DNA from: Guillardia theta CCMP2712
Lineage: Eukaryota; Protista; Cryptophyta
Direction: 5' to 3'
NCBI RefSeq assembly: GCF_000315625.1
Contig: NW_005434589.1
Location: forward strand, 75,330 to 139,329
Length of the DNA stretch: 64,000 nt
Below are positions 3,479-38,880 of this stretch, piece by piece (position 1 is the stretch's first letter; each line of letters begins with the position of its first letter). The notes under the pieces are model-generated. The model was not told where the DNA came from. It worked only from the letters and a program-made list of their open reading frames with translations, and searched no databases. The position numbers were made by a program, and so were the translations under genes.

Positions 3479-6400
3479 CAGAATTAAGTTATTTGATCGC
3501 GTCTCACTTTGTGCAGATGTCGAGAGTCTGTTCCTCCGAAGCCACTTGGACACCCTTGAAGCCACTGATGACGGATTGGACGGAGAAATCACCGAGTTTG
3601 CCGACCTTGAGACCTTGATCGACCGAAAGTTGCTGCAAATCGCTTCTTCATGTCAGGAGGAGGAGGAGGAGGAGAAAGTCGGCACCAATGAGCTCTACAT
3701 TCACTCGACGGTGTACGGGGGTTCTCTCAGGACGAGCCACCGGGGCTCCGTGCTTGAGAGCCATGACGACTTCGTATCGGCCAAGGTGAAGAGCAGCGTC
3801 TCTCAGGGCTCGTGGATGTATGAAGTCACTCTGCACACCGGCGGGCTCTCTCAGATCGGCTGGGCAACCTCCCGGTGCAGGTTCACGAGCATGATAGGGG
3901 TGGGAGACACGCAGGGGTCCATAGCCTATGATGGGCATCGGACGTTCCGATGGAACAACAAGAGTTTCGCTCAGTACGGACTGCCGTGGGCGTGCGGGGA
4001 CGTCGTAGGATGCTGCATCGACCTGGACGCAGGTGTCGCATCCTTCACGCTCAACGGGGTGAATCTGGGAACCGCCTTCACCTCTCTGAGGAGGACGTGC
4101 TACAGTCCTGCCGTGAGTGTCGCGTACGGGGAGAAGATCAGCGTCAACTTGGGGTCTAGCCCCTTCCAGGTCCAGGGAGATTGTGTGGCAGATCCTGACT
4201 GACTCGTCGGCAGTTCCCTCAGGCTGGCTTCAGGGCTCTCTGCAGGCAGCCGAGGACAAGTCTGCAGCAGCAGCACGACTACATCTGGCGGTCAAGCATG
4301 AAGTTCGCGCTCAGGAGCATGAACCCGGCTTCCTGCTTCACTAGCGCGCAAGAGGCCTGTGCGACCTTGTACGAGGATGCATCGGACGATGTTGAGGACT
4401 CGTCTAGGTCAGTATGGAGGGAGTCTTGTGCCTGCAGTGCTGAGGCTGGAGCAGGAGCAGGAGGCTGTGGAGGGCTGGCTCCTCCCCTTCGGACATGTCG
4501 GTGCTCTTCATGCACTTGCTCCTCTCCAAGATCTTCAGCGGGAAGCTCGACTCACATCACATCACCTTCAGCGTCAGGAGATACTTGTTCAAGCACCTCG
4601 TTGCCCTCTGCGCAAGGGAGCCCAACGGGCTTGGCGCTGCGGCCTACGTGATAGGGTTGATGTCTGTCCTGCTCTCTCCGCAGGACTCTAGAGTCCTCTG
4701 GCCTTCCTTGCTGGAAGTTTGCGCAGAGCAGGCAAGATACAGCTCCTTGCGCTGGGGTACAGCTGGGGGGGTTCAGGGTGACAGACCGCTGGAGGTGACG
4801 GAGGCACAGACATGCGAGTTCAGTCTTGCTATCTTGTACATCCTCCTCAGGAACAGGATTACCCGGGAGGTCCTGATGGGTCACGTCGAGAGTCTTTGTG
4901 CCAACCTTGAGGTGGCAGCGAGCGAACGCGTTGACGTGCAGCTGACGTGCCGGGGCAGGACGCGATGTCGTACCGAGAATTCTCTGAGACGTCGCTGGAG
5001 CACCTTCCGCCCAGCAAGGTCTGCGCCAGCAGCACCACACGGCTCTTGACGCTCTCTCGCAGATTCTCTTTCAACTGATGACCGACGAGGTTCACAAACT
5101 CGAGGTTTCTGGTACCAACCTCTTGCTGCCATGACGCTTCCCTTGCAGGTCACATGGAAGGAGATCTTTGAGCTGATACCGCAAAGCATCCGATCCCGTT
5201 GGATGCTGTCCCTTGTTGCCAGGAACAGACAAGCTGAGGCCTCCGTGGTTCCGCCAGGAGTCACGAGGACGTTCCTGTCGGTCAACACGTTCTTCATCTT
5301 TCTTGCAAGGTCTCTAGACCAGCTCGACCAGACCAGTTGGACAGACAAGCTGTACCGGCTGGTGAACTTCTCTGACAAGAACGCGTTTTACCTGTATGGA
5401 AACATTCATGTTGATGTCTCGCTCTTGGGAGGGACAGTGCAGTATGTCACTAGAACTTACGGATCGAACGATGACGTTGACGTGGAAGAAGACGAGGTTG
5501 TGTTAGAGTTTCGCCGCGTGCTGCTCTACTTTATGTTTCGGATTCAAAGCAAACTCCAGCAGGCGCTATGTTCACATCCTTTGTTCTGCGGCTCTGACGT
5601 TGGCGTCATCAACCCTGTCTTCATGGAGGCCCAGGATCAAGACACTATGAACCACAAGAAGAGTATCGTGTGTTGTACCACTACCTTCTCTCCTCGGAAC
5701 AGTCTGCTCATCTTGCGATTTTTCAACCTTCTGATCGATGCGCTGAACTCGCTCATTCAGGTGATGACAAAAAGTTGCCCAAGCTCCCCCTGCCTCTTCC
5801 TTCTGTGACTTGTGTTCTCCATCGCTTCCCTTCCCCTTCCCATCACCATCCGACTGCGATCGCAGACTCGTCGTTCATCGCTCTACTTCGTTCCTGAGGG
5901 CCTCCTGCTTGCTACTCTCAGCCTGATGATTGCTCTTGCCAAGGTATCTTGTTGTCGACACGCTCAGGACCTGACAAGATTTCAGGTCCAGGGAAAGCAG
6001 TTCTTCAAACGTCAAGGTGGCTGCCTGTTTGCAAGGCTAGCTAACCGCTCTAACTCTTGGTGAAGGAGGAGCAGTTGAGACGGTCATCAGAATTCTAGTC
6101 GAGTGCATCAGTGATAGAATGATCATCAACCCCGATGTCAAGGCAAGCATCTTGGCCGCCATGTCTTTAGTGATGAAACATTCGGCTGATCTCGGTACTG
6201 TTCTCGCCTCTTCCCCTGATGCTCTCTTGACCGCGTCTTGGGCATCAGAACTCTTCCAGACGGACATGGACGGGCGGGCCGAGTGCCCAGGGGAGAAGTC
6301 GAGGACTTCACTCAAGTTCGAGCTGTTCCGATCGCTGCTAGAGTCCTTTGACGACAAGAACTGGGTGCCAACGCTGAGAATCTTGCGGGAGGTATGGGAG

Positions 6401-8015
6401 GGAACTGCGATGAGTCAGCGGTTGAAGACTTCTTCCTTTGCGAACCATCACGACAAGAGCACGACATTGGGGTTCGGCCATGACAGCTGCAGCTCCCTAA
6501 CAAGGTCGTTCGTTCACGTGGCCTCAAAGGCGGATCATCTGGAGACCTGGCAAAACGTGATCGATCGAATTGTGACGAAGTTGAATTGGTCAATCTCAGA
6601 AGCGACTGGTAGGTTGACTGGTCAGATTTGCGCCTTGTCACGCTGTCGCTGCAGGAACGGTGAACGAGATTAGGAACAGCAACGCGAGAATGCTTCTTCA
6701 ATCGTCATACATTGAACCTGAGGTAGAGGCTGTCCTACCTCTTGCCTTCCCCTCCCTTCCCTTGATGCTGTTGGCAGAATCGTGTCCTAGAGGCTCTTGA
6801 AATTCAGAACTTGACGCTGCAAAAAGTGAGATGGAGTGATGACGCAGCAGGAGTTGTCTTGCTGAATTTGGGTTCTACTCAGATGAGGAAAATAGAGGTC
6901 ATGTCAGAGCTGTCGAGAGATCTCCTTTTAGCGCTTGAATTCTCTTGCAACTTCTTCCCGCATGTGGTTTCCAGTCTATCCGATGTCATGCTTCAGAGGG
7001 TTGTAGATAGTCTTTTGCATTTCCTTTCATTTGTAGGTGAGTCCATTCCACCGATGAGGGATTTTTTACTGACAAGTATGAATGCTTCAGATAACGAGTG
7101 TACAATGTTTCAGGTCTGAAAGTTACAAACCTCTTTCTTTCGAGTTTTGATTGCAGATGCAGTCTCTTAACAACGTCCCGGTCTTGCAAGAAAGAGACTT
7201 CAAGTCTCTGAGACAAAGCGACTTCCTTCTTCCCGTGTTGGGTTCGATTTCAGCTTTACTCTTCAATCAAACTACGTTCAAGTCCTCTCAAGGTGAGGAG
7301 CTTCATCATCGTGCTGTACTGAAAGTCGTCCGCAAGTCCTTGACTTGGACTCTGTCTCTCAACGCAACCTGCTGGTACGTTTCTCATCTTTCTCGCTCTT
7401 CTTCCTCAATGATCCATTCTCAGGCCATCGTGACATCTGCAGCGTTTGTTTCTTCAAGATTCGACAGGTTGTGCAAACTTTCGTGGATCAAAGAAGACAA
7501 GTCCATCCTGGGTATCGCCCGGCACAAGCATGTCGCTTACAGCAAGCAAGCTGTCGCCTACGTCGGGGACCTCAGCAAGATCATTCAGGACACTCTTTGT
7601 CGAGGCTCTAAAACATCCTCCATCGTTCACGTCGAGGTTTCAAGATCTGCTCTTGAAACACAAGTGATTCTGCTCTCAGGATGATGCCGATATTCCCGAG
7701 AGGTTTCTTGACCCCTTGACCTTCTCTCTCATGCGAGATCCTGTCACACTGCCGGCGTCAGGACAGGAAGGAAGTATGTACGTGTTTGCTGCCCCTGACC
7801 TCCTTCCTGCAGACTGTGGATCGTCGAACGATCCTCCAGCACCTTCACGTCTCTGGTGCCCTTGATGATCCCTTCAGCAGAACTCCGTTGAACGAGAGCA
7901 TGTTAGCCCTTTCTCCTCTAGCTGGCAAGAGATTTACTGTGGACTCAGGCTGGTCCCCAACGAGTCGTTGAGGAAGGAGATCGAGAGCTGGCTGATGTCG
8001 CACGGGCGACGTTGA
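3323..8015 (+). CDS. KPC1/RNF123/RKP-like ubiquitin ligase: SPRY domain, helical core, C-terminal U-box; multi-exon
   Basis: SPRY motifs WMYEVTL, QIGWAT, GVGDT, WACGDVVGCCIDLD. RKP-like core motifs YFVPE, DDKNWVP, KLNWSISE. U-box IPERFLDPLTFSLMRDPV...TVDRRTILQHL...DPFSRTPL...VPNESLRKEIESW, stop at 8013-8015. ATG 3323 with intron 3390-3516; some internal exons uncertain. Confidence 0.8.
3400..3480. repeat. (GAGCAG)n microsatellite in intron 1 of the SPRY gene
   Basis: About 13 perfect hexamer copies between the GT at 3390 and the AG at 3516. Confidence 0.9.
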
Positions 8016-8038
8016 TCGTTGCTGTTCCATCTCAACCT

Positions 8039-9225
8039 TCAGATTGGCGAACGAGTCAGGATGCTGAGAGCAAGGAGAGCTGGTAAGAGGGCACGTTCAT
8101 GGATGGTCGAAGCAGCTCCTGTTAATGTGGCCCCGAGGCAGTTGAAGCAACAGCTGTCGATGCCAGTGGAGGCAGGGAAGGTTGTGTTGAGACTGTACGG
8201 ACAGTCTTGGCAGTATGACTTTCCCAGCTCTATCAGGACAAGTCAGTGCTGTAAAGTTGACAAAAACACACAAATGACCTGATTGGAATGTTCCCAGCTC
8301 ACAGGGCAGACATGGTTCGAATCCCGTGCTGCTATATGTACCTCTGCGGCACAGTTTGAGGCACAAGCTTGCACTAGAAGCTCCTTCCTGCTCTGAGCGT
8401 GACCAGAGATGGCAAGAAACATGCGACTTCACCATGCTCGTGCTGTACCCAGGGGGACAAAACTGGCAGAGGCCACTTCCTCTGGTCTCCTGCGAGGTAG
8501 TTAGAACCTCCTTGCTCTCTTTGCGCTTGCCTTGTAAGTTCCACGTGGGCATGGCATGCAGGGAGCAGGCAGTTTCTCGCCGCACGTCAGCTTCCCGCCC
8601 GCCACCAAGAATCCGCAGAAGCCCGCCTCACATTCACATCTCCCCGTTGACGCACATCTTGCAAACAAATGACCTTGTGCCTCCCCTCTGACTCTTCACC
8701 TTGAGTTCTCATACGTAGCTTCCTTGTATCTGCAATTCCACCTAGACATTGAGTCATTCTCCTCCTTGCCATCTCGAGCGTCGGTTACTCCTTCAGCGAG
8801 CAGTTGGATGGGTTCAGATCGTATGCTGCTATACAGCATGTCGCCGAGCAGCTTGAGCCGCAGCTGAGGCATTGGAGAGTCATTGCAATCGTATCCATGA
8901 TGGCCAAACCTTGAGGAACAACCGCAACGTCCATCGCATGACACGATCTTCTGTCCCGACGGCCCTGAGCACTCTGATGTGCAGTGAGACGAGATTGTGC
9001 TGAAACATGAAAGTTCGTCACATGTCACTCGTGGAACAACCAGAACAACCTCACACAAATAGCGTCTGCCATTCTCATAGCATCGGCACATCGAGGGACA
9101 ACGAAGACCCCGTCGGGCTCGAATGAGCATGAGGAGACATCAGGAGCAAGACCTCGGGCAACTGGCCTCTCTGCCAGGAGAGCAGCATACCACAACCACA
9201 TGCGTATTCCCTTCATCCTCCACAT
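8039..9225 (-). CDS. Cys-rich (EGF-like + GCC2/GCC3 ephrin-receptor-like repeats) surface protein with hydrophobic, GPI-signal-like C-terminus; multi-exon
   Basis: Signal-like N-terminus (MWLWYAALLA). Spliced repeats CMPCPRGTYK|ETRGSGLCQFCPPGYST and CRRGTYSSTGFEPCLPCELGTFQ. Last exon ELGKSYCQDCP...GAASTIHERALLPALLALSILTRSPI*, stop at 8039-8041. Confidence 0.7.
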
Positions 9226-9369
9226 TTCTCATGCGGCAGCCTCAACTTTGACCTCAGGCGCTCGGAGACCGTAGGAGTGTCACAAGGGCAAGTACTTGGT
9301 GGGCAACCAGGTAGAGAAGATAGCGAGGAAGGGGAGCGAGGGAGATAGGGAGCAGGCGGAACAGATCAG

Positions 9370-9508
9370 CAGGGGAGGGGAAGGAGCAGGGGAGGGGAAG
9401 GAGCAGGGGAGGGGAAGGAGCAGGGGAGGGGAAGGAGCAGGAGAGGGGAAGGAGCAGGGGAGGGGAAGGAGCAGGAGAGGGGAAGGAGCAGGGGAGGGGA
9501 AGGAGCAG
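9370..9508. repeat. 17-bp minisatellite (AGGGGAGGGGAAGGAGC)n, about 8 copies
   Basis: Direct inspection; some copies carry a GGGG to GGAG variant. Confidence 0.9.
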
Positions 9509-9768
9509 TAGCCTGGAGCAGTAGGAAAGCAGGAGGGCAAGGAGGTCCGACCGCTTTATTTTTGCGAGTCGTAAAAGGACCACTAAATAGGTGTTGTATT
9601 CGAGGCTTATTAGCTTGTGCTGGAGTTTGATTGACTGCATACGGATACATTTGCAAAGATAGAGAGGTTAGTAGGTATGATGCCATTCCGAAGATGTTTG
9701 TGAGGGAATGAGGGTTACAGTTGTTTGCGGTCGAGCTAACGGATGAGATACCAGAACATGTAGAGGAA

Positions 9769-11070
9769 TTACTTGCTGGCTGACGCCTTGCGCCCTCTGC
9801 TTCTCTTCGCTGGTTTCTGGTCTGCAGCTGATGTGCTTGACAAGCCTCTCTTAAGATCTTCTCGATCTGCAGGCAGAGACTCGTTGGTTGCAGCGAAGGT
9901 CGAGTTGAGCAGCGTCGAAGCCTGAGGTGTAGTCTTCTTGGGGCTGAAGAACATATCGAGCTTGCCTTGGGGCTTCACCATCTTGGCTTTCTTGATCGCT
10001 TCAAGCCCTCCTCTCACTCTCTTCTCGCTGAAACCTTTCTCCTTCACAAGAAACTCTATCAAGCCCTCTTCGTCGGGTTCGGCATTCCAATCTATGCTGA
10101 GATTTCCCATGTCGACTACCTCAGGTGTAGTCAGCAGCTGTCGGATCTCATCGATGGGGAAGGGGTCAGGGACCACGAACTTGCTCGTGTTCAAACTCTC
10201 GATGAAGCTCTCGATATTTCCATGCTTGCGTATCCCGTGTAAGGCTGACTTCGGCCCGATCCCTTTGATAGTCTCAGAAAAGTCACATCCGCACAAGATG
10301 CAAAAATCTACAAATTGCGTCATATTGAGGCCCAAACTGCTGAGAACCTGGTCTAGATGATACTCAAGAACAGGTAATTTCCTCGCTTCCGACATGGTGA
10401 GCCTTCGCACGAGGATCGGAGAGCCGCAGCATAGCGCATCCATGTCCTCAGTCGCTGATGCATAGACCAACCCATTCTTAGCCAGAGCTGCACATTGAGC
10501 TTCGGCTTCTGAAGGTGCGTCAACCGTCGGAACTCCTAGCAGTCTCAGGAGCCGTTTACACTCTTCAGCATGCTGTTTGGTGACACGAGTTGTTCGTTTC
10601 GCAAACTTGTTCATCTCCTCAACATTCCCTTCTTCAGTGGCTTCTTGCAGCCTCTTGGCGCCCTCGTCCCTCCGGAGGTTTCGAGATGCGATTTCACCGG
10701 ACTTCAACGATGGCGGCTTTCCATCGAACACGTAGAGAGGACGGATACCTGCCTTGACCATGGCTATGGTTCTCCAGAAGAATCCTTGAAGATGACTTGT
10801 CTCTTCCCCGCTGGCTGATGTTAGAGGCTGAGCTACACCATTCTCACCAGTTGAACGAACTGCAATGAGAAACTGATACATCGCCATGCTCGCGTCTATG
10901 GCGAGCTTCTTTCCTTGGAAATCTTGAAGAGAACGCTCCTTGAGACATCCTGGCGCCTCCTTGGCAAGGAAAGGACCAAGGCCATGGATCCCACCATCTG
11001 ATGACTTGAGACAAGAAAGAAAGGTAGTGAAGAAGAAGAAGTAGTATACCAATGCTTGTCGATGAGACAT
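9769..11070 (-). CDS. FEN1: Flap endonuclease 1, intronless, with N-terminal signal-peptide-like extension
   Basis: GIHGL N-motif, LAIDASMAMYQFL, TSHLQGFFWR, YVFDGKPP, APSEAEAQCA, ATEDMDAL, CILCGCDF, IKGIGPK, PIP-box QGKLDMFF and a basic tail. First in-frame ATG at 11070. Confidence 0.95.
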   Translation of the reverse strand: MSHRQALVYYFFFFTTFLSCLKSSDGGIHGLGPFLAKEAPGCLKERSLQDFQGKKLAIDASMAMYQFLIAVRSTGENGVAQPLTSASGEETSHLQGFFWRTIAMVKAGIRPLYVFDGKPPSLKSGEIASRNLRRDEGAKRLQEATEEGNVEEMNKFAKRTTRVTKQHAEECKRLLRLLGVPTVDAPSEAEAQCAALAKNGLVYASATEDMDALCCGSPILVRRLTMSEARKLPVLEYHLDQVLSSLGLNMTQFVDFCILCGCDFSETIKGIGPKSALHGIRKHGNIESFIESLNTSKFVVPDPFPIDEIRQLLTTPEVVDMGNLSIDWNAEPDEEGLIEFLVKEKGFSEKRVRGGLEAIKKAKMVKPQGKLDMFFSPKKTTPQASTLLNSTFAATNESLPADREDLKRGLSSTSAADQKPAKRSRGRKASASK

Positions 11071-11209
11071 GAGAAGTGAAGGTCTAGTTACGGTAGACAA
11101 GAAGCACCGTCATCATCGACTCCAAGCATTCTTCCCATCCAGCTCAAGTTCCCCTATTCGCACAACACGCCCCATATTCAAACTTTTGAAACTACTAGTG
11201 ACCTGGACT

Positions 11210-11640
11210 TCTGAGGGCCGACTCGGAGTCCGATCCGGGCCGCAGGGCGGCCGGGCCCGGGGCCGGGCCGAACCGTTCACTGAAGCCTGCCAACACTGTC
11301 ACGGTGACACGTGGGCTCGTGACTGACCAACACAGACTTGTCCGGCGGAAATTCCCAGTCCCCGGAGCTGCTGACTTAGGGTGAACTTAGCGGCGGCCCC
11401 CAGGCTCGTTGGCCCAATGGGCCCGGGCCGGGCCTCTGAGTCCGATCTCACTGAGTCACCGGGCCTTGAAGGCCCTGGCCGCGCAGCAACGGACGGCGGC
11501 GCCGGGGCCGGGGCCTTTTGCCATGATTGAACTTTAGAAGGTTATGAGCCTCATAGCAGTCTCCTGTACGGTACTTGAGGTGTCATCCGGCAACTGAAGC
11601 CAGACCGTTCGAGGTTGGGTGGCCCGGGGGGTCGATGGGA
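11210..11640. promoter_or_regulatory. GC-rich CCGG/GGCCC patch in the divergent FEN1 / Mid1-like intergenic region
   Basis: Dense GGCCGGGCCC, GGCCCGG and ACTC/GAGT motifs. The same patch type recurs upstream of several other genes. Confidence 0.5.
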
Positions 11641-11822
11641 TCATGATGAAGGGGTGGGGGTAGTTAGACCAGGGTCAGGAAGGGAGCGTATCAGGTAGAA
11701 ATGGGGGTAGTCGAGGTCAATATGAAAAATTGATGACGGGGTCATGGGTGGTGAATATAGCACTGTACCTCCTCCCTGTAACGAGGGCCCGGTGGGTGGT
11801 GGTGAAAGGGTGAAGGTCGATC

Positions 11823-13009
11823 ATGGCGGTGGCGGCGAGACGGTTGACATTGCGAGGAGGAGGTGAGGGAGGCGTTGATGATGGATATGGATCGAGCTCC
11901 TGTCAGTGTCATGCTTCCAGACATGTTGATGGAAACAGAGATGTTGATGTGTGTCTCTGCCACAAGAGGACAAGTAACAGGTCTTGCAGTCCTCCTCGTC
12001 TTGATTGGCATGGCTGAGTCGTACATGACAAATTATGTCTGCAACACTTCATATGAGCTGGTCGAGAAGCAAAATCTGTCACGAACAGCGGAACCTGGCA
12101 AGGTCCTAAAAGATTTCTTCTCGTTGTCTGTTTCTTACATCCAGTTGTAAGGTTGAATTTTTCTGCAAAGACTATGTGAATTATACTGCGGTCTGTGATA
12201 CGGGGATCGATCCAAATCTCGGTTTCAATCCCAGTTGCAACAACACCTTTGCCATACAGGTACTTGCTGATGTCGTTGTTCGAGACCTGCTGAGTGCTGA
12301 TTGAATGTACTCTTATCAAGGTGTTTGCAAACCTTCAGCGAGCCCTCAGCGTCTACAGCTGCAGGGAGTATAGTCGTATCTGGACATGCGACAATTGTCG
12401 ATCAATTGAAACAATCAATGTCAAGCACGTTGACACTTCTGCAGGTTCTGCTGCATACAAGCGATGGCTCTGTGCCTCAATGTAAGTTTTCAGTTCACCT
12501 CCTGTCTTGCCTTTGATTGCCGAAATAGTTATCGCAAATGTGCTTGGGAGGATCCCTCCCTTCCCGGCCACCAGTGTCCTACCAACTTCACCAGGACTAA
12601 CTATCAAGCAATTCCGGACTGTGTTGTTAAAACATGCCAAGATGTCTGCTACGATGTGAGTTGATGCAAGTCGTGAACTTATTGCGCGATAACGTGCTGA
12701 GGATCCAGGTTGTGAGAAAATGCCCTGTAAACCTGGGCTTTCAATGTCCTCCCGTCAACGACATTCGAGAATACGATGTTTCTAATTGTGAGATTGTCAT
12801 TCAGTTTAACCAGAAGCAGTTTGATAGCGCTGCAGGTAACAACCTTGAAAGACCTTCGACTTCACTTTCAAGCAGAAAAAAACGCGGCTCGATATGGGTA
12901 TCATAAATTTTGCCCACTTTCAATGTCGAACTGAGGACGATTTGTTGCGCAGGTGGCCACGTTGCTTCTTGTGATGTCACAGATGCTCTCCACGTCCTTT
13001 ACATCATGA
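11823..13009 (+). CDS. Mid1/FAM155 (NALF)-like Cys-rich channel auxiliary subunit; multi-exon
   Basis: Spliced product contains YSRIWTCDNC|SAAYKRWLCASI|YRKC and KTCQDVCYD|VVRKCPVNLGFQCP...SNC|N, matching the Mid1 pattern YSxxxxCxxCxxAYKxWLC...CxxxCxxxxxxCPxxxGFxCP...CN. It has a hydrophobic N-terminal segment (LAVLLVLIGMAES) and C-terminal segment (VATLLLVMSQML). Start codon uncertain. Confidence 0.78.
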
Positions 13010-33428: not shown

Positions 33429-35122
33429 ATGGCTGGCACAAAGCTGCTAGCGGGGTTGCTAGCACTGTACTGGACACAAGTTGAGATGGAACTGATGCCT
33501 CTCGGTAGGACGAGAGATAATCTTGCCCTCGATGTTGGCTTGAGCCGTCTCTGTCGTCTGAGAGAGAACCTCAGAGGTGGATATAATGATGACATCATGC
33601 TCGGGAACGAGCGGAAAAGGGCTAGGAATGATCAGACATGCATGAGTGAGAAAGGAGGAAGGACGATGCGTGACAGACAAGATAGTCACAATGATGAGGA
33701 GAAGAGGCTTCATGACACCCATATCTATGACTTTGAGGAGACGGATGAGTTGGAGGATAACGATAAGCAAATGCTGAAAGACATGTATGCAAAGGCCGCA
33801 AAGGATTACCCCGATTATGAATTCCAGCGAATACTTGAACAAGACAAAGAAGAAGAACTGAGGAGCACGCGACTGGATCGTGGAGCGCTCGTCCTTGTGG
33901 GGAATGGAGTAGAAGAACTGGACGTGGTCAGTTTTGTCACGGCTCTAAAGGAAGCCAACATTGAAGTTGTGACCGCTTCAATCGAAGGTAATCGAACGAT
34001 CCGGGGCAAACAGAGCTTGACCTTCCGAGCTGACACCATCCTGTCTGATGTCGACAAACCTCTGGACTTCCTGGGGGTTGTGATCCCCGGTGGAAACAAG
34101 AACTATACTTTGACCATGTCGAGAGACGAGCGGGTTAGAGTGCTTGTCCGCTGCCAGTATGATCGTAAAGGCATCTGCTGCTCTCTTGGAAGTGGAGTAA
34201 TTACGCTTAAAAATTCCGGCATCCTCTACGGACGGCAGTACACGGCTCCTCCGGATCTGAGAGAGCAACTCCCCGATCTGGAAGAAGATGTAGCGGTCAA
34301 AGCAGATGAGAATGTTGTGACGTCACAGGGAGGAGGAACAGCGTTGGATGCAGCCATGACGCTGGTCGAGCTATATCAGGGGCAGACAGCAGCTGTTCGT
34401 GTGGCCAGAGCTTGTCGACATCCGAGGTTGGACACCAAGTATTGTAGCATGCCTATTCACATCGACGAAGCATACAATATTCCGCAATCTGTTATGGAGC
34501 CAAACGATGACCTGGAGATTCTCCGTCCCTGCATTGGTTCATTTCCACCTCGGAAACGGTTCAACGAATCTCAGTTTGAAGAAGCATGGGGAGAGCATGA
34601 CAACGAGCTGCGAGAGCATGACAACGAGCTGCGAGAGCACGAGGCGATGATATCTCAATTATACTTCGTCAACGGCTGTCAGAGATGCACAGAAGAGTAT
34701 CAAGCTAAGCTAGAGAAAGACGGGTCGCTCATCAACTCACAGTGGGATGCATGTTCTCATGTCATCGAAGCGGAGAACAGCATGCAAGGAGATCTACAGA
34801 TCGGCGAGAAGGCTAGCGAGGTGAGCTATGATCTCCTCCTGGTTGACTTGATGGAACCGAACAGGTTGAGAAAGTTTCTGCCCTCCTGTCGTTGCTGTCA
34901 GGAGCAGAAGCACCTGCAGGCAGGGGGACGAGCTTTAACTTTGATCGATCGTGGGATACAGCAGAGAAGGTCAGTCTCATGCTTTTGCGTAGCTCCGAAT
35001 GATTTCTTCACGTTGGACAGCCCGAGCAGGAGGAGGTCACTCGCTTGTGGGAGGCAGGAGAAATCTCCGATGAGACTTTCCTCACGGCAAAGACTATCGA
35101 CTTGTATCTCGCATCCGGCTGA
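33429..35122 (+). CDS. DJ-1/PfpI (ThiJ)-like domain protein with signal-like N-terminus and acidic extensions; probably lacks the catalytic Cys
   Basis: ALVLVGNGVEELD, IEVVTASIEG, FRADTIL, VVIPGG, ENVVTSQGGGTALDAAMTLVE; two short 3' introns give a stop at 35120-35122. Confidence 0.8.
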
Positions 35123-38100: not shown

Positions 38101-38880
38101 TGATTCCATTCTCCTTCTCATAATCCTTACATCTCGACAGAATTTCAGATGCCTGCTCTGCAGCTCTGCAGTCCATCCAAAGCAATGCTGGTCGCAAGGG
38201 TTTCTTGTGATCATCCAAAGCTACCACTGTGCAGCAAGTTGTATCCACACACAATGCTTTGACCCTCATGTTCACATTCTTATGAACTTGATCCGTCTGT
38301 TTGATCAATCCTCGCACTTAAACAAGCTCAATGTGAGGTCATAAAACTCTGATGAAATCAGATACCTGCTTTACCCATGCTCTGCCACCACTCGTCTGGA
38401 TCCTGTTCTGCCCATCCTGGATGTGGATGCCGAGTCTCGTATGGAGCCGCAAATTGTCCCAACATGTTGCCCTTGACGTCGAACATCTGTGAGAAATTTG
38501 AATGAGGGGAGATAAGTTGGGGAGTTCATGATCCACCGCTGCACGAATGGACTCTGTTCCACCATCGACACTTATGAACAGGGAGTCGGATGGCTGGCAG
38601 CCACCCCTGATGCGAAGCAAGGGCGACTTTCCTGCGAGCTCTCATCAAGACGATAGTCGTTCATCGACGAAAGTACCAAGACTCTTCAAGACTGTCGGGG
38701 CGGCTTGAATCTGGAACATCCAGACCGTAGCGATAGCTGGAGAGATCATCATTCCATTTCAGATCAATCCAAGTAGGAGGCACAGAAGGAGGAGAGGAGG
38801 AGAGACAGCTGTCGATCATGATCACCTGCTCGCTGCAGCAGCTTCACCACCATCCATCCCCTTCCTCCCCGGGCCGGCAT
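35174..38880 (-). CDS. FGGY-family pentulose kinase (ribulokinase-like) fused to ribulose-phosphate 3-epimerase; multi-exon, with presequence
   Basis: Kinase: ISVDGGTESIRA, HPGWAEQDPDEWW, VDTTCCTVV, LLWMDCRA, QGGPDA, LITGSSHLH, LLGCAILAAVATG. RPE: KICPSLLACDW, WIHL|DMFDG, LTFGP, LDVHLVV, VEPGFGGQKF, MVDGGIN, VAGSFVF. The ORF at 36302-36508 reads from the kinase tail straight into the RPE N-terminus. Confidence 0.88.

What the first reader, a model, noticed from the sequence alone, without database searches (positions are those of the whole stretch)
10980..11070. FEN1 whose initiator Met is replaced by a signal peptide: candidate nucleomorph-targeted replication enzyme
Seen: the universal MGIxGL start reads DG-GIHGL, preceded in frame by MSHRQALVYYFFFFTTFLSCLKSSDG (hydrophobic core plus a small-residue S-D-G cleavage-like site). 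The gene is intronless among intron-rich neighbours and keeps its PIP-box and basic tail. Established: the free N-terminal Gly of FEN1 lies at the active site, and cryptophytes import nucleus-encoded proteins through the ER into the periplastid compartment and nucleomorph. Inference: signal cleavage would regenerate the native Gly N-terminus, activating the enzyme only after import, apparently without a conventional transit peptide. The lack of introns suggests retroposition or endosymbiotic transfer.
Basis: partly seen in the sequence, partly recalled or inferred. Interest (0 to 1): 0.75.

Follow-up and report, generated by a model that had tools for sequence, protein, structure and literature searches.

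The report
Second FEN1 with a signal-peptide leader
The cryptophyte alga Guillardia theta has, besides an ordinary flap endonuclease (FEN1), a second copy whose start methionine is replaced by a cleavable-looking signal peptide fused exactly to the catalytic N-terminal glycine; this makes it the best candidate so far for a host-encoded DNA-replication enzyme sent to the alga's relict second nucleus, but its location has not been shown.

Summary
Window 11070..9769 (minus strand) is an intact, intronless, transcribed 433-aa FEN1 of Guillardia theta CCMP2712, annotated as XP_005825316.1. Residues 1-26 form a signal-peptide-like leader. Gly27 aligns with Gly2 of human FEN1 and of nearly all canonical FEN1s.

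DNA and RNA contigs and a second strain rule out a sequencing error, and RNA contigs show no splice onto GIHGL.

At least seven cryptophyte lineages, including Hanusia and Baffinella, have diverged leaders that all end at the same junction. The -3/-1 residues are always small (SDG|G, SDC|G, AEA|G, TEA|G, VQG|G, VSG|G). The catalytic residues, PIP box and basic tail are conserved.

Guillardia and Hanusia also express a canonical MGIKGL FEN1. In this assembly it is mostly lost in a gap, so the window gene is not the only FEN1.

Periplastid/nucleomorph targeting is the best reading (about 0.62) but is unproven. The leader has no transit-peptide-like spacer and no [LI]RGG end, unlike other candidate periplastid leaders in this genome.

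The lack of introns is derived, because Baffinella's orthologue has about 12 exons. It is not a mark of endosymbiotic transfer. A red-algal origin is untested, and the AU test does not reject a within-lineage duplication (p = 0.13).

The parts
11068..11070 (-). Most likely start codon (ATG) of the leader-bearing FEN1
   Evidence: It is the first in-frame ATG after the TGA at 11112-11110. The N-terminus MSHRQA is conserved as MTDRQA in Hanusia. The RNA contig X1 at 10982-11154 is collinear across it.
10993..11070 (-). 26-codon leader MSHRQALVYYFFFFTTFLSCLKSSDG: n-region MSHRQ, uncharged h-region of 16 residues, c-region KSSDG with Ser at -3 and Gly at -1
   Evidence: The orthologous leaders have h-regions of 11-14 residues, c-regions of 5-8 residues in seven of the eight orthologous leaders (the crude parse gives 2 for Hanusia), and small -3/-1 residues.
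10978..10992 (-). GIHGL, equivalent to residues 2-6 of canonical FEN1; Gly27 corresponds to the catalytic N-terminal Gly2
   Evidence: Query residue 27 aligns to residue 2 of human FEN1 (8yjh_D) and of nearly all representatives.
10663..10992 (-). XPG N-terminal nuclease domain (aa 27-136), including the equivalents of D34, Y40, D86, K93 and R100
   Evidence: Pfam PF00752, E = 7e-25; residue-by-residue alignment to human FEN1.
10282..10536 (-). XPG I-region (aa 179-263), including the equivalents of E158, E160, D179, D181 and D233
   Evidence: Pfam PF00867, E = 3e-28; alignment to human FEN1.
9946..9969 (-). PIP box QGKLDMFF (PCNA-interaction motif QxxLxxFF)
   Evidence: It aligns to human QGRLDDFF. 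It is conserved in every listed orthologue whose sequence reaches the C-terminal region: QGKLDAFF, QGRLDNFF, QGRLESFF, QGRLDSFF, QRRLNAFF, QGKLDSFF.
9772..9816 (-). Basic C-terminal tail KPAKRSRGRKASASK (NLS-like); the protein has no KDEL/HDEL ending
9769..9771 (-). Stop codon TAA
11071..11154 (-). Transcribed 5' leader of the mRNA, with short upstream ORFs (ATGs at 11138/11129 in one frame and at 11116/11113 in another)
   Evidence: The RNA contig X1 reaches 11154; uORF translations are.
11055..11107 (-). 53-nt GT..AG segment treated as an intron in the deposited model XP_005825316.1; it is retained in the RNA contig
   Evidence: P0271 sequence, sequence of the segment, collinear RNA contig.

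Best explanation
This is a second, nucleus-encoded FEN1 of plastid-bearing cryptophytes that enters the ER co-translationally through a cleavable signal peptide.

Signal peptidase cuts exactly between leader residue 26 and Gly27. That cut produces the free Gly N-terminus which canonical FEN1 obtains by Met removal and which sits in the active site.

The plastid complex lies inside the ER lumen. From there the mature protein, with a non-aromatic +1 Gly and a charge-neutral N-terminus, most likely crosses the periplastid membrane. It would then enter the nucleomorph with the help of its basic tail and remove Okazaki-fragment flaps on nucleomorph PCNA through its PIP box. The canonical MGIKGL paralogue would serve the host nucleus.

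Shown here: the gene, its transcription, the two-paralogue arrangement, the conserved leader and junction, and intact catalytic and PCNA-binding motifs.

Inferred: cleavage at the junction, passage across the periplastid membrane without a separate transit peptide, and nucleomorph localisation.
For: - The ORF is intact and transcribed. RNA contigs run collinear across the leader and the coding region, at low depth (about 3-6) and with no coverage of the intergenic stretch 11217-11822.
- Gly27 corresponds to Gly2, and Gly2 at the processed N-terminus is an active-site element (PMC5490271).
- Seven lineages have non-homologous leaders with 11-16 uncharged residues, mostly a basic residue just before the h-region, a c-region of 5-8 residues in nearly all (crude parse: 2 in Hanusia), and small -3/-1 residues at one invariant junction.
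- In Baffinella an intron splits the leader, yet the c-region stays fused to GIKGL.
- Between two Guillardia strains the leader has 2 nonsynonymous and 0 synonymous codon changes, against 6 and 16 in the mature part.
- All catalytic residues and the PIP box are conserved.
- A canonical FEN1 is expressed in G. theta (P0270) and Hanusia (P0138).
- The leader clade is monophyletic, with SH-aLRT support of 99.
- A signal peptide is regarded as required for nucleomorph targeting (PMC6411479).
- Cryptophyte nucleomorph genomes encode no DNA polymerases, and the imported replication enzymes are still unidentified (PMC5443833).
- In diatoms a mature domain can supply transit-peptide function, and neutral N-termini reach the PPC while acidic ones stay in the ER (PMC3017844). 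The mature N-terminus here has a net charge of about 0 over 20 residues.
Against: - There is no localisation or N-terminal proteomic data.
- The leader lacks the transit-peptide-like part of the cryptophyte bipartite signal, and signal-peptide-only proteins normally stay in the ER or secretory route.
- Other candidate periplastid leaders in the same window have a spacer of about 30 aa ending in [LI]RGG. A cut after such an RGG end could be as precise, so the need for an exact N-terminus does not by itself explain the missing spacer.
- The N-terminal charge of the mature part does not differ from that of canonical FEN1s.
- The diatom precedent used an artificial substrate in another lineage.
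- No red-algal affinity was found.
- I could not check the nucleomorph genomes directly for a fen1 or pcna gene.
- SignalP was not available; the signal-peptide call rests on rules.
Confidence: 0.62

Rival explanations
1. The protein is an ER-lumenal, secreted or vacuolar nuclease. The signal peptide sends FEN1 into the ordinary secretory route, for example to digest nucleic acids, and it never crosses the periplastid membrane.
For: The leader is a signal peptide only, with no transit-peptide-like spacer and no [LI]RGG end, unlike the other candidate periplastid leaders in this window. In diatoms, lack of a functional transit peptide arrests proteins in the ER (PMC3017844).
Against: The PIP box QxxLxxFF and a basic NLS-like tail are conserved across the clade, which would be pointless where there is no PCNA or chromatin. 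The protein has no ER-retention ending. The strict preservation of the exact catalytic N-terminus and of all flap-endonuclease residues points to replication-type activity.
Confidence: 0.15
2. The leader is an uncleaved signal anchor, or is not functional, and the protein acts at or near the host nucleus or ER membrane as a modified or inactive FEN1.
For: In G. theta the uncharged stretch is 16 residues, at the upper end for a signal peptide. Cleavage has not been observed.
Against: The h-regions of the orthologues are only 11-14 residues, too short for a membrane span. Small -3/-1 residues are invariant at the junction. An uncleaved leader would block the Gly N-terminus needed in the active site (PMC5490271). 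A canonical FEN1 already serves the host nucleus.
Confidence: 0.08
3. The protein is targeted to the mitochondrion or the plastid stroma, and the leader is a presequence for an organelle with a bacterial-type genome.
For: FEN1 is reported in mitochondria of other eukaryotes (my own knowledge, not checked here). Some orthologous leaders are rich in Arg, Ala and Leu.
Against: The leaders have an uninterrupted uncharged core rather than an amphipathic basic helix. Stromal import in cryptophytes needs an aromatic +1 residue and a positively charged transit peptide (PMC5443833; PMC3017844), whereas here +1 is Gly and the net charge is about 0. A PIP box implies a PCNA clamp, which those organelles lack.
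Confidence: 0.07
4. The finding is an annotation or assembly artefact. The true mRNA would start with Met-Gly through a splice or an error, and the gene would be the ordinary nuclear FEN1.
For: The deposited model differs at the 5' end. The tract encoding the leader is pyrimidine-rich and ends in CAG, resembling a 3' splice site.
Against: Splicing at that CAG would put the downstream ATG out of frame. The RNA contig is collinear and the DNA contig identical. A second strain, Hanusia transcripts and five further lineages show the same architecture. A separate canonical FEN1 transcript exists.
Confidence: 0.03

Closest known systems
Canonical eukaryotic FEN1 (human FEN1, PDB 8yjh/3q8k; G. theta's own canonical FEN1, UniRef A0A6U5W9X7)
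   Same: It has the XPG_N and XPG_I domains, all seven carboxylates, the K93, R100 and Y40 equivalents, the PIP box and a basic tail. It is about 50 % identical to human FEN1 over the aligned residues 27-377 (E = 3e-115) and 47 % identical to the canonical paralogue.
   Different: There is no Met before the catalytic Gly. Instead a 22-61-aa hydrophobic leader is fused to it. The clade also has its own signatures, such as GLGPLLxKEAP and ALCCGSP. It forms a separate, strongly supported clade restricted so far to cryptophyte-type sequences.
Nucleus-encoded nucleomorph-targeted proteins: G. theta histone H2A (PMC5443833); B. natans POLD, POLH, RFC1, RPA1 (PMC5635652)
   Same: It is a host-nuclear gene that exists beside a host-compartment paralogue, has an N-terminal signal peptide and a non-aromatic +1 residue, and has a replication or chromatin function needed by a nucleomorph that lacks the gene.
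   Different: Those proteins carry a bipartite signal, that is a signal peptide plus a transit-peptide-like sequence. FEN1 has the signal peptide only, fused directly to the first catalytic residue. Their localisation was shown by GFP (B. natans) or predicted by the standard rule, whereas none is shown for FEN1.
'Self-targeting' of FcpD-GFP constructs in the diatom Phaeodactylum (Felsner et al. 2010, PMC3017844)
   Same: [quoted passage not shown] Neutral, non-acidic N-termini reach the periplastid compartment.
   Different: That was an engineered reporter in a diatom with a residual four-residue transit peptide. Here it would be a natural substrate in a cryptophyte with no residual transit peptide at all, and this is untested.
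Candidate periplastid leaders of G. theta ending in [LI]RGG (scan notes s1-431663, s1-436899; examples at window 33570 and 38611)
   Same: They share the same genome, a signal-peptide-like start, and a leader that ends exactly where the conserved mature protein begins.
   Different: FEN1 has no spacer and no RGG end. Its junctions read SDG|G, AEA|G, VQG|G and so on, which are signal-peptidase-type sites.

Membership tests
FEN1 (XPG/Rad2 flap endonuclease 1) | XPG_N and XPG_I nuclease domains | tested here: met
   PF00752 at 87.8 bits and PF00867 at 98.5 bits, both above the curated cut-offs.
FEN1 (XPG/Rad2 flap endonuclease 1) | Seven metal-binding carboxylates plus the Lys93, Arg100 and Tyr40 equivalents | tested here: met
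   All are identical in the alignment to human FEN1 8yjh_D.
FEN1 (XPG/Rad2 flap endonuclease 1) | Free Gly2 N-terminus in the active site | not testable with these tools
   Gly27 aligns to Gly2, but it becomes a free N-terminus only if the leader is cut exactly there. The cleavage is inferred from -3/-1 conservation.
FEN1 (XPG/Rad2 flap endonuclease 1) | C-terminal PIP box QxxLxxFF and basic tail | tested here: met
   QGKLDMFF at aa 368-375; tail KPAKRSRGRKASASK.
Cleavable eukaryotic ER signal peptide | A basic n-region, an uncharged h-region of about 7-15 residues, and a polar c-region with small residues at -3 and -1 | tested here: met
   A rule-based parse of nine leaders gives h-regions of 11-16 residues, c-regions of 5-8 residues in eight of the nine leaders (2 in Hanusia), -3 in S/A/T/V and -1 in G/C/A. 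SignalP was not available.
Cleavable eukaryotic ER signal peptide | Actual co-translational cleavage | not testable with these tools
   This needs N-terminal proteomics or in vitro translocation.
Cryptophyte bipartite targeting signal for the periplastid compartment | Signal peptide | tested here: met
Cryptophyte bipartite targeting signal for the periplastid compartment | Transit-peptide-like sequence between the signal peptide and the mature protein | tested here: not met
   In all orthologues the leader ends directly at the residue equivalent to Gly2.
Cryptophyte bipartite targeting signal for the periplastid compartment | Non-aromatic residue at +1 after the signal-peptide cut (periplastid rather than stromal class) | tested here: met
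   The +1 residue is Gly in all orthologues. The rule is as stated in PMC5443833.
Cryptophyte bipartite targeting signal for the periplastid compartment | Leader ending in a ubiquitin-tail-like [LI]RGG (a lead from this scan, not an established criterion) | tested here: not met
   FEN1 leaders end in SDG, SDC, AEA, TEA, VQG, VSG or CQA. The motif is present in two other leaders of this window.
Nucleomorph-targeted, nucleus-encoded replication protein | A separate host-compartment paralogue in the same organism | tested here: met
   P0270 (G. theta) and P0138 (Hanusia) are canonical MGIKGL FEN1 transcripts. Their exons lie on C68 at 97-100 % identity.
Nucleomorph-targeted, nucleus-encoded replication protein | Localisation in the nucleomorph and absence of the gene from the nucleomorph genome | not testable with these tools
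   There are no localisation data, and the nucleomorph chromosomes were not available to the tools. No open paper pairs 'nucleomorph' with 'flap endonuclease' for cryptophytes.
Endosymbiont-derived (red-algal) gene transferred to the host nucleus | Phylogenetic affinity to red-algal FEN1 | tested here: inconclusive
   The leader clade is sister to an unidentified MMETSP protein (P0022) and groups only weakly with deep stramenopiles. No red-algal FEN1 could be identified among the labelled rows. The AU test does not reject sisterhood with the canonical cryptophyte FEN1, p = 0.13.

The most novel reading that the evidence does not exclude
This would be a natural substrate for periplastid import that has no transit peptide. 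Signal peptidase itself would create the catalytic Gly N-terminus of FEN1, and the N-terminal segment of the folded enzyme (GI[HKQ]GLGxxLxKEAP...) would double as the signal read by the periplastid-membrane translocon. The protein would then be the first identified host-encoded enzyme of the cryptophyte nucleomorph replisome, and a counter-example to the rule that periplastid proteins need a bipartite presequence.
Probability: 0.4. Interest if true: 0.75.

Novelty: new variant of a known kind. Interest (0 to 1): 0.62.

Why it matters
How the cryptophyte nucleomorph replicates its DNA is an open question. Its genome encodes no DNA polymerases, and the imported enzymes have not been identified (PMC5443833).

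This gene gives a concrete candidate that can be tested directly. It is an ordinary, assayable enzyme with a clear paralogue control in the same cell.

It also sets up a clean experiment on import rules for complex plastids. The enzyme cannot tolerate extra N-terminal residues, so the leader had to end at one exact residue, and it does so in every lineage with a signal-peptidase-type site and no transit peptide. If the protein reaches the periplastid compartment, the bipartite-signal rule used for genome-wide predictions would miss a class of proteins.

On the practical side, the deposited gene model has a doubtful 5' end. The canonical FEN1 is also largely missing from the assembly, which could mislead gene inventories.

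Tried and rejected
- **Splice explanations.** A GT..AG segment inside the leader (GTATAC...TCATCAG, 52 nt) would put the FEN1 body out of frame. A 45-nt variant would keep the frame but still give no Met-Gly. The ATG at 10997 is out of frame. No splice was seen in the RNA contigs.
- **Sequencing error at 10993-10998.** Excluded by X6, by X1 and by the second strain L019.
- **Only FEN1 in the genome.** The assembly suggests this, but the transcript P0270 shows a canonical FEN1 whose gene is broken by a 100-N gap on C68.
- **L019 as RNA evidence.** It turned out to be genomic DNA of a related strain, so it says nothing about splicing.
- **Red-algal origin.** Naming 20 further representatives gave stramenopiles, metamonads, apicomplexans, a plant and animals, but no red alga, so this could not be tested.
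- **Tree building.** A PMSF mixture-model tree and an AU test on 99 rows did not finish. I used LG+G4 and a 38-row set instead.
- **Identity of the sister P0022.** A search with it found no named close relative.
- **Adaptation of the mature N-terminus to a transit-peptide role.** Its net charge is not different from that of canonical FEN1s.
- **A second nuclear PCNA with a leader.** Only one PCNA locus was found, on C83.
- **Repeat or transposon in the GC-rich upstream spacer.** It is single-copy with no inverted repeats.
- **Curtis et al. 2012.** The paper is not held in the library, so I could not check whether its predicted periplastid proteome lists this protein.
Full report
**What is there.** The minus strand of the window carries an uninterrupted ORF from ATG 11070 to TAA 9769, 433 codons long. 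Pfam finds the two FEN1/XPG nuclease domains, XPG_N at residues 27-136 and XPG_I at 179-263. The protein begins MSHRQALVYYFFFFTTFLSCLKSSDG, followed by GIHGL. In a phmmer search of PDB, residue 27 aligns to residue 2 of human FEN1. All catalytic residues are identical: the equivalents of D34, D86, E158, E160, D179, D181 and D233, plus K93, R100 and Y40. So is the PIP box, QGKLDMFF against human QGRLDDFF. In an exhaustive search of 1.84 billion representatives, the same register (query 27 to protein 2) holds for nearly every canonical FEN1.

**Organism and annotation.** The assembly has 87.1 Mb in 669 contigs. An exact-cluster look-up identifies the gene as Guillardia theta CCMP2712, XP_005825316.1 / EKX38336.1 / UniRef L1IPY4, 'flap endonuclease 1', 435 aa. 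That deposited model starts at an upstream ATG (11129) and removes a 53-nt GT..AG segment (11107-11055), giving MLGVDDD-ALVYYFFFF.

**Is it real?** I laid four public runs on 9500-12500. Runs X1 and X2 behave as RNA: they carry the + strand neighbour spliced at four GT..AG introns of 127, 49, 61 and 48 nt, and they have no coverage of the intergenic stretch 11217-11822. They cover the FEN1 gene at low depth (about 3-6) with collinear contigs. One of these runs from 10982 to 11154, spanning GIHGL, the whole leader, ATG 11070 and the 53-nt segment, with no difference and no joint. Run X6, which is unspliced and DNA-like, covers 10137-11642 with no differences. A metagenome contig from a related Guillardia strain (L019, 95 % nucleotide identity including the intergenic flank) keeps the same ORF with two amino-acid changes in the leader. 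A sequencing error at 10993-10998 and a splice that would join an ATG to GIHGL are therefore both excluded as far as contigs can show. The alternative in-sequence splices I could construct either break the frame or still give no Met-Gly. ATG 11070 is the better start than the deposited one, because the RNA contig keeps the 53-nt segment and because Hanusia conserves the N-terminus (MTDRQA against MSHRQA). With this start the mRNA leader holds short uORFs. Either start keeps the hydrophobic core and the junction.

**Comparative evidence, the key result.** The closest proteins are cryptophyte: Hanusia phi (81 %), Baffinella frigidus (65 %) and several environmental lineages at 69-72 %. Every one that is complete at the N-terminus has a hydrophobic leader ending directly at GI[HKQ]GL:

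| Lineage | Junction |
|---|---|
| G. theta | ...CLKSSDG\|GIHGL |
| Hanusia | ...CLGWSDC\|GIHGL |
| P0004 | ...CERRAEA\|GIHGL |
| P0294 | ...SRQNTEA\|GIHGL |
| P0291 | ...PHRRVQG\|GIHGL |
| Baffinella | ...ARPVSG\|GIKGL |
| P0010 | ...RRDTEA\|GIQGL |
| P0184 | ...NACQA\|GIHGL |

The leaders are not alignable with each other, but they share the same anatomy. Most have a basic residue just before an uncharged core of 11-16 residues, then a polar c-region of 5-8 residues (2 for Hanusia in my crude parse), with S/A/T/V at -3 and G/C/A at -1. This is the classical signal-peptide layout, and the junction is the only position that obeys the -3/-1 rule in all lineages. The cores are too short for a membrane anchor, and being uninterrupted by charges they do not look like mitochondrial presequences. 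Between the two Guillardia strains the leader has two nonsynonymous and no synonymous changes, whereas the mature part has 6 and 16. This fits a leader selected for composition and a mature part under purifying selection. Tsutakawa et al. 2017 describe 'Gly2 at the processed N-terminus' as part of the FEN1 active site (PMC5490271). That explains why the junction cannot drift.

**Is it the only FEN1?** From the assembly alone it looks so. The only other FEN1-like piece, on contig C68, covers the equivalents of residues 53-154 and abuts a 100-N gap. The exhaustive protein search, however, returned P0138, which matches the C68 exons at 98.6-100 %. Its cluster holds a Hanusia phi protein (A0A7S0EIY2) and a G. 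theta transcript product (A0A6U5W9X7, P0270, 399 aa), both starting MGIKGLTKVIG and both with a PIP box (QQRMDSFF) and a basic tail. Guillardia and Hanusia therefore each express two FEN1s, one canonical and one with a leader.

**Introns and origin.** In Baffinella the orthologue is spread over about 8 kb in about 12 exons. One intron lies inside the leader: the h-region is in exon 1, and 'RPVSG-GIKGL' opens exon 2. Another environmental lineage (P0291) reads through at least one intron. The intronless state in G. theta is therefore derived. That is compatible with retroposition or RT-mediated intron loss of a copy that already had the leader, and it is not a sign of endosymbiotic transfer.

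In maximum-likelihood trees (LG+G4, 99 and 38 rows) the leader clade is monophyletic (SH-aLRT 99). It is sister to an MMETSP protein of unknown organism (P0022, 98-99) and groups only weakly (93-94) with deep stramenopiles such as Platysulcus (and Cafeteria in the 99-row tree). The canonical cryptophyte FEN1 sits elsewhere. An AU test does not reject a tree in which the two cryptophyte types are sisters (p = 0.13). I could not identify any red-algal FEN1 in my sample, so the red-algal hypothesis is untested rather than refuted.

**Where does the protein go?** This part is inference. A signal peptide puts the protein into the ER lumen, which in cryptophytes surrounds the plastid complex. A flap endonuclease that keeps its PCNA-binding motif and a basic NLS-like tail in every lineage, and has no ER-retention ending, has no obvious use in the ER or outside the cell. 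The only PCNA- and chromatin-containing compartment behind the ER membrane is the nucleomorph. The literature supports several steps. A signal peptide is treated as required for nucleomorph targeting (PMC6411479). The nucleomorph-targeted H2A of G. theta has a signal peptide plus a transit-peptide-like sequence without Phe at +1, cryptophyte nucleomorphs encode no DNA polymerases, and their imported replication enzymes are still to be identified (PMC5443833). In the chlorarachniophyte B. natans, POLD, POLH, RFC1 and RPA1 were shown by GFP to be nucleomorph-targeted, but FEN1 was only discussed as nuclear (PMC5635652). No open paper links a flap endonuclease to a cryptophyte nucleomorph.

**The weak point.** The leader lacks the second half of the bipartite signal. 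Felsner et al. 2010 showed in a diatom that the mature domain can supply transit-peptide function, that crossing the periplastid membrane does not need positive charge, and that acidic N-termini hold proteins in the ER (PMC3017844). The mature N-terminus here has Gly at +1 and a net charge of about 0 over its first 20 residues. That is the class which reached the periplastid compartment in those constructs, but it is no different from canonical FEN1s. Notes from this scan (s1-431663, s1-436899 and others) say that many candidate periplastid proteins of G. theta have leaders made of a signal peptide, a spacer, and an ending in a ubiquitin-tail-like [LI]RGG. I checked the two examples in my own window and they are there: at 33570(+) a signal-peptide-like start, about 30 residues, then ...NLRGG, and at 38611(-) ...LLRIRGG. 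FEN1 has neither the spacer nor the RGG end, so it is atypical for this genome. A cut after RGG could also be exact, so the need for a precise Gly N-terminus does not by itself explain why FEN1 uses a bare signal peptide. I therefore put periplastid/nucleomorph targeting at about 0.62, an ordinary ER or secretory fate at about 0.15, and the remaining rivals lower.

**Novelty.** The gene is annotated as FEN1, but I found no description of the leader, of the two-paralogue arrangement, or of the exact fusion to the catalytic Gly. The genome paper (Curtis et al. 2012) is not held in the library, so I could not check whether its predicted periplastid proteome lists the protein. As a host-encoded, signal-peptide-bearing candidate for the nucleomorph it belongs to a known kind. 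The direct fusion of signal peptide to catalytic residue without a transit peptide, conserved across the group, is a new variant.

**Limits.** No signal-peptide predictor was available, and the RNA evidence consists of low-depth contigs rather than reads. No localisation or proteomic data exist, the nucleomorph genomes could not be searched, and the organisms of P0022 and of the environmental orthologues are unknown.

Noticed in passing
G000:C68:40420-40836 (L005 5424-5834), next to the N run at L005 5322-5421: In this assembly the canonical FEN1 gene of G. theta is represented only by the exons for residues 53-154. The 5' part falls in a 100-N gap, and the 3' two-thirds are nowhere in the 87-Mb assembly, although a full-length transcript product exists (P0270).
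   Followed up: yes
window 11055-11138: The deposited model XP_005825316.1 uses ATG 11129 and a 53-nt GT..AG intron (11107-11055). The RNA contig X1 retains that segment. With ATG 11070 as the start, the mRNA leader carries two overlapping sets of short uORFs, with ATGs at 11138/11129 and at 11116/11113.
   Followed up: partly
L018 (Baffinella frigidus MU646764.1) 4070-11244: The introns of the Baffinella FEN1 orthologue contain near-copies (60-97 % at protein level, some with stops) of the neighbouring exon segments, at least eight times along the gene. These could be uncollapsed haplotypes, an assembly artefact, or real local duplications.
   Followed up: no
L004 = G000:C107:118609-121833, match at about 1501-1805: This is a decayed FEN1-like fragment with in-frame stops, about 40 % identical to residues 287-360 of the window protein. 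It may be a relic copy, for example of the parental intron-bearing locus.
   Followed up: no
P0022 / P0272; L020 348-1487: The sister of the leader clade, from an unidentified MMETSP organism, also lacks Met before the Gly. It begins MPLTGG-GIKGL with no hydrophobic core. Its six-residue prefix ends L-x-G-G, reminiscent of a ubiquitin tail. The frame upstream is open with no ATG for 115 codons.
   Followed up: partly
window 33570 (+) and 38611 (-): Two other genes in the window have leaders that end in NLRGG and LLRIRGG directly before the conserved part. The first has a signal-peptide-like start and a spacer of about 30 aa. This matches the scan's lead about ubiquitin-tail-like ends of periplastid leaders.
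   Followed up: partly
window 9368-9508: There is a 17-bp tandem array (AGCAGGGGAGGGGAAGG, 8.3 copies, 96 % matches) about 260 bp downstream of the FEN1 stop codon.
   Followed up: no
window 11200-11530: The spacer between FEN1 and the divergently oriented neighbour is very GC-rich, with many GGCCCGGGCC-type runs. It is single-copy in the genome and has no inverted repeats.
   Followed up: yes
G000:C83:321767-322139: Only one PCNA locus was found in the nuclear assembly, so any nucleomorph PCNA partner would have to be nucleomorph-encoded. This was not checked.
   Followed up: partly
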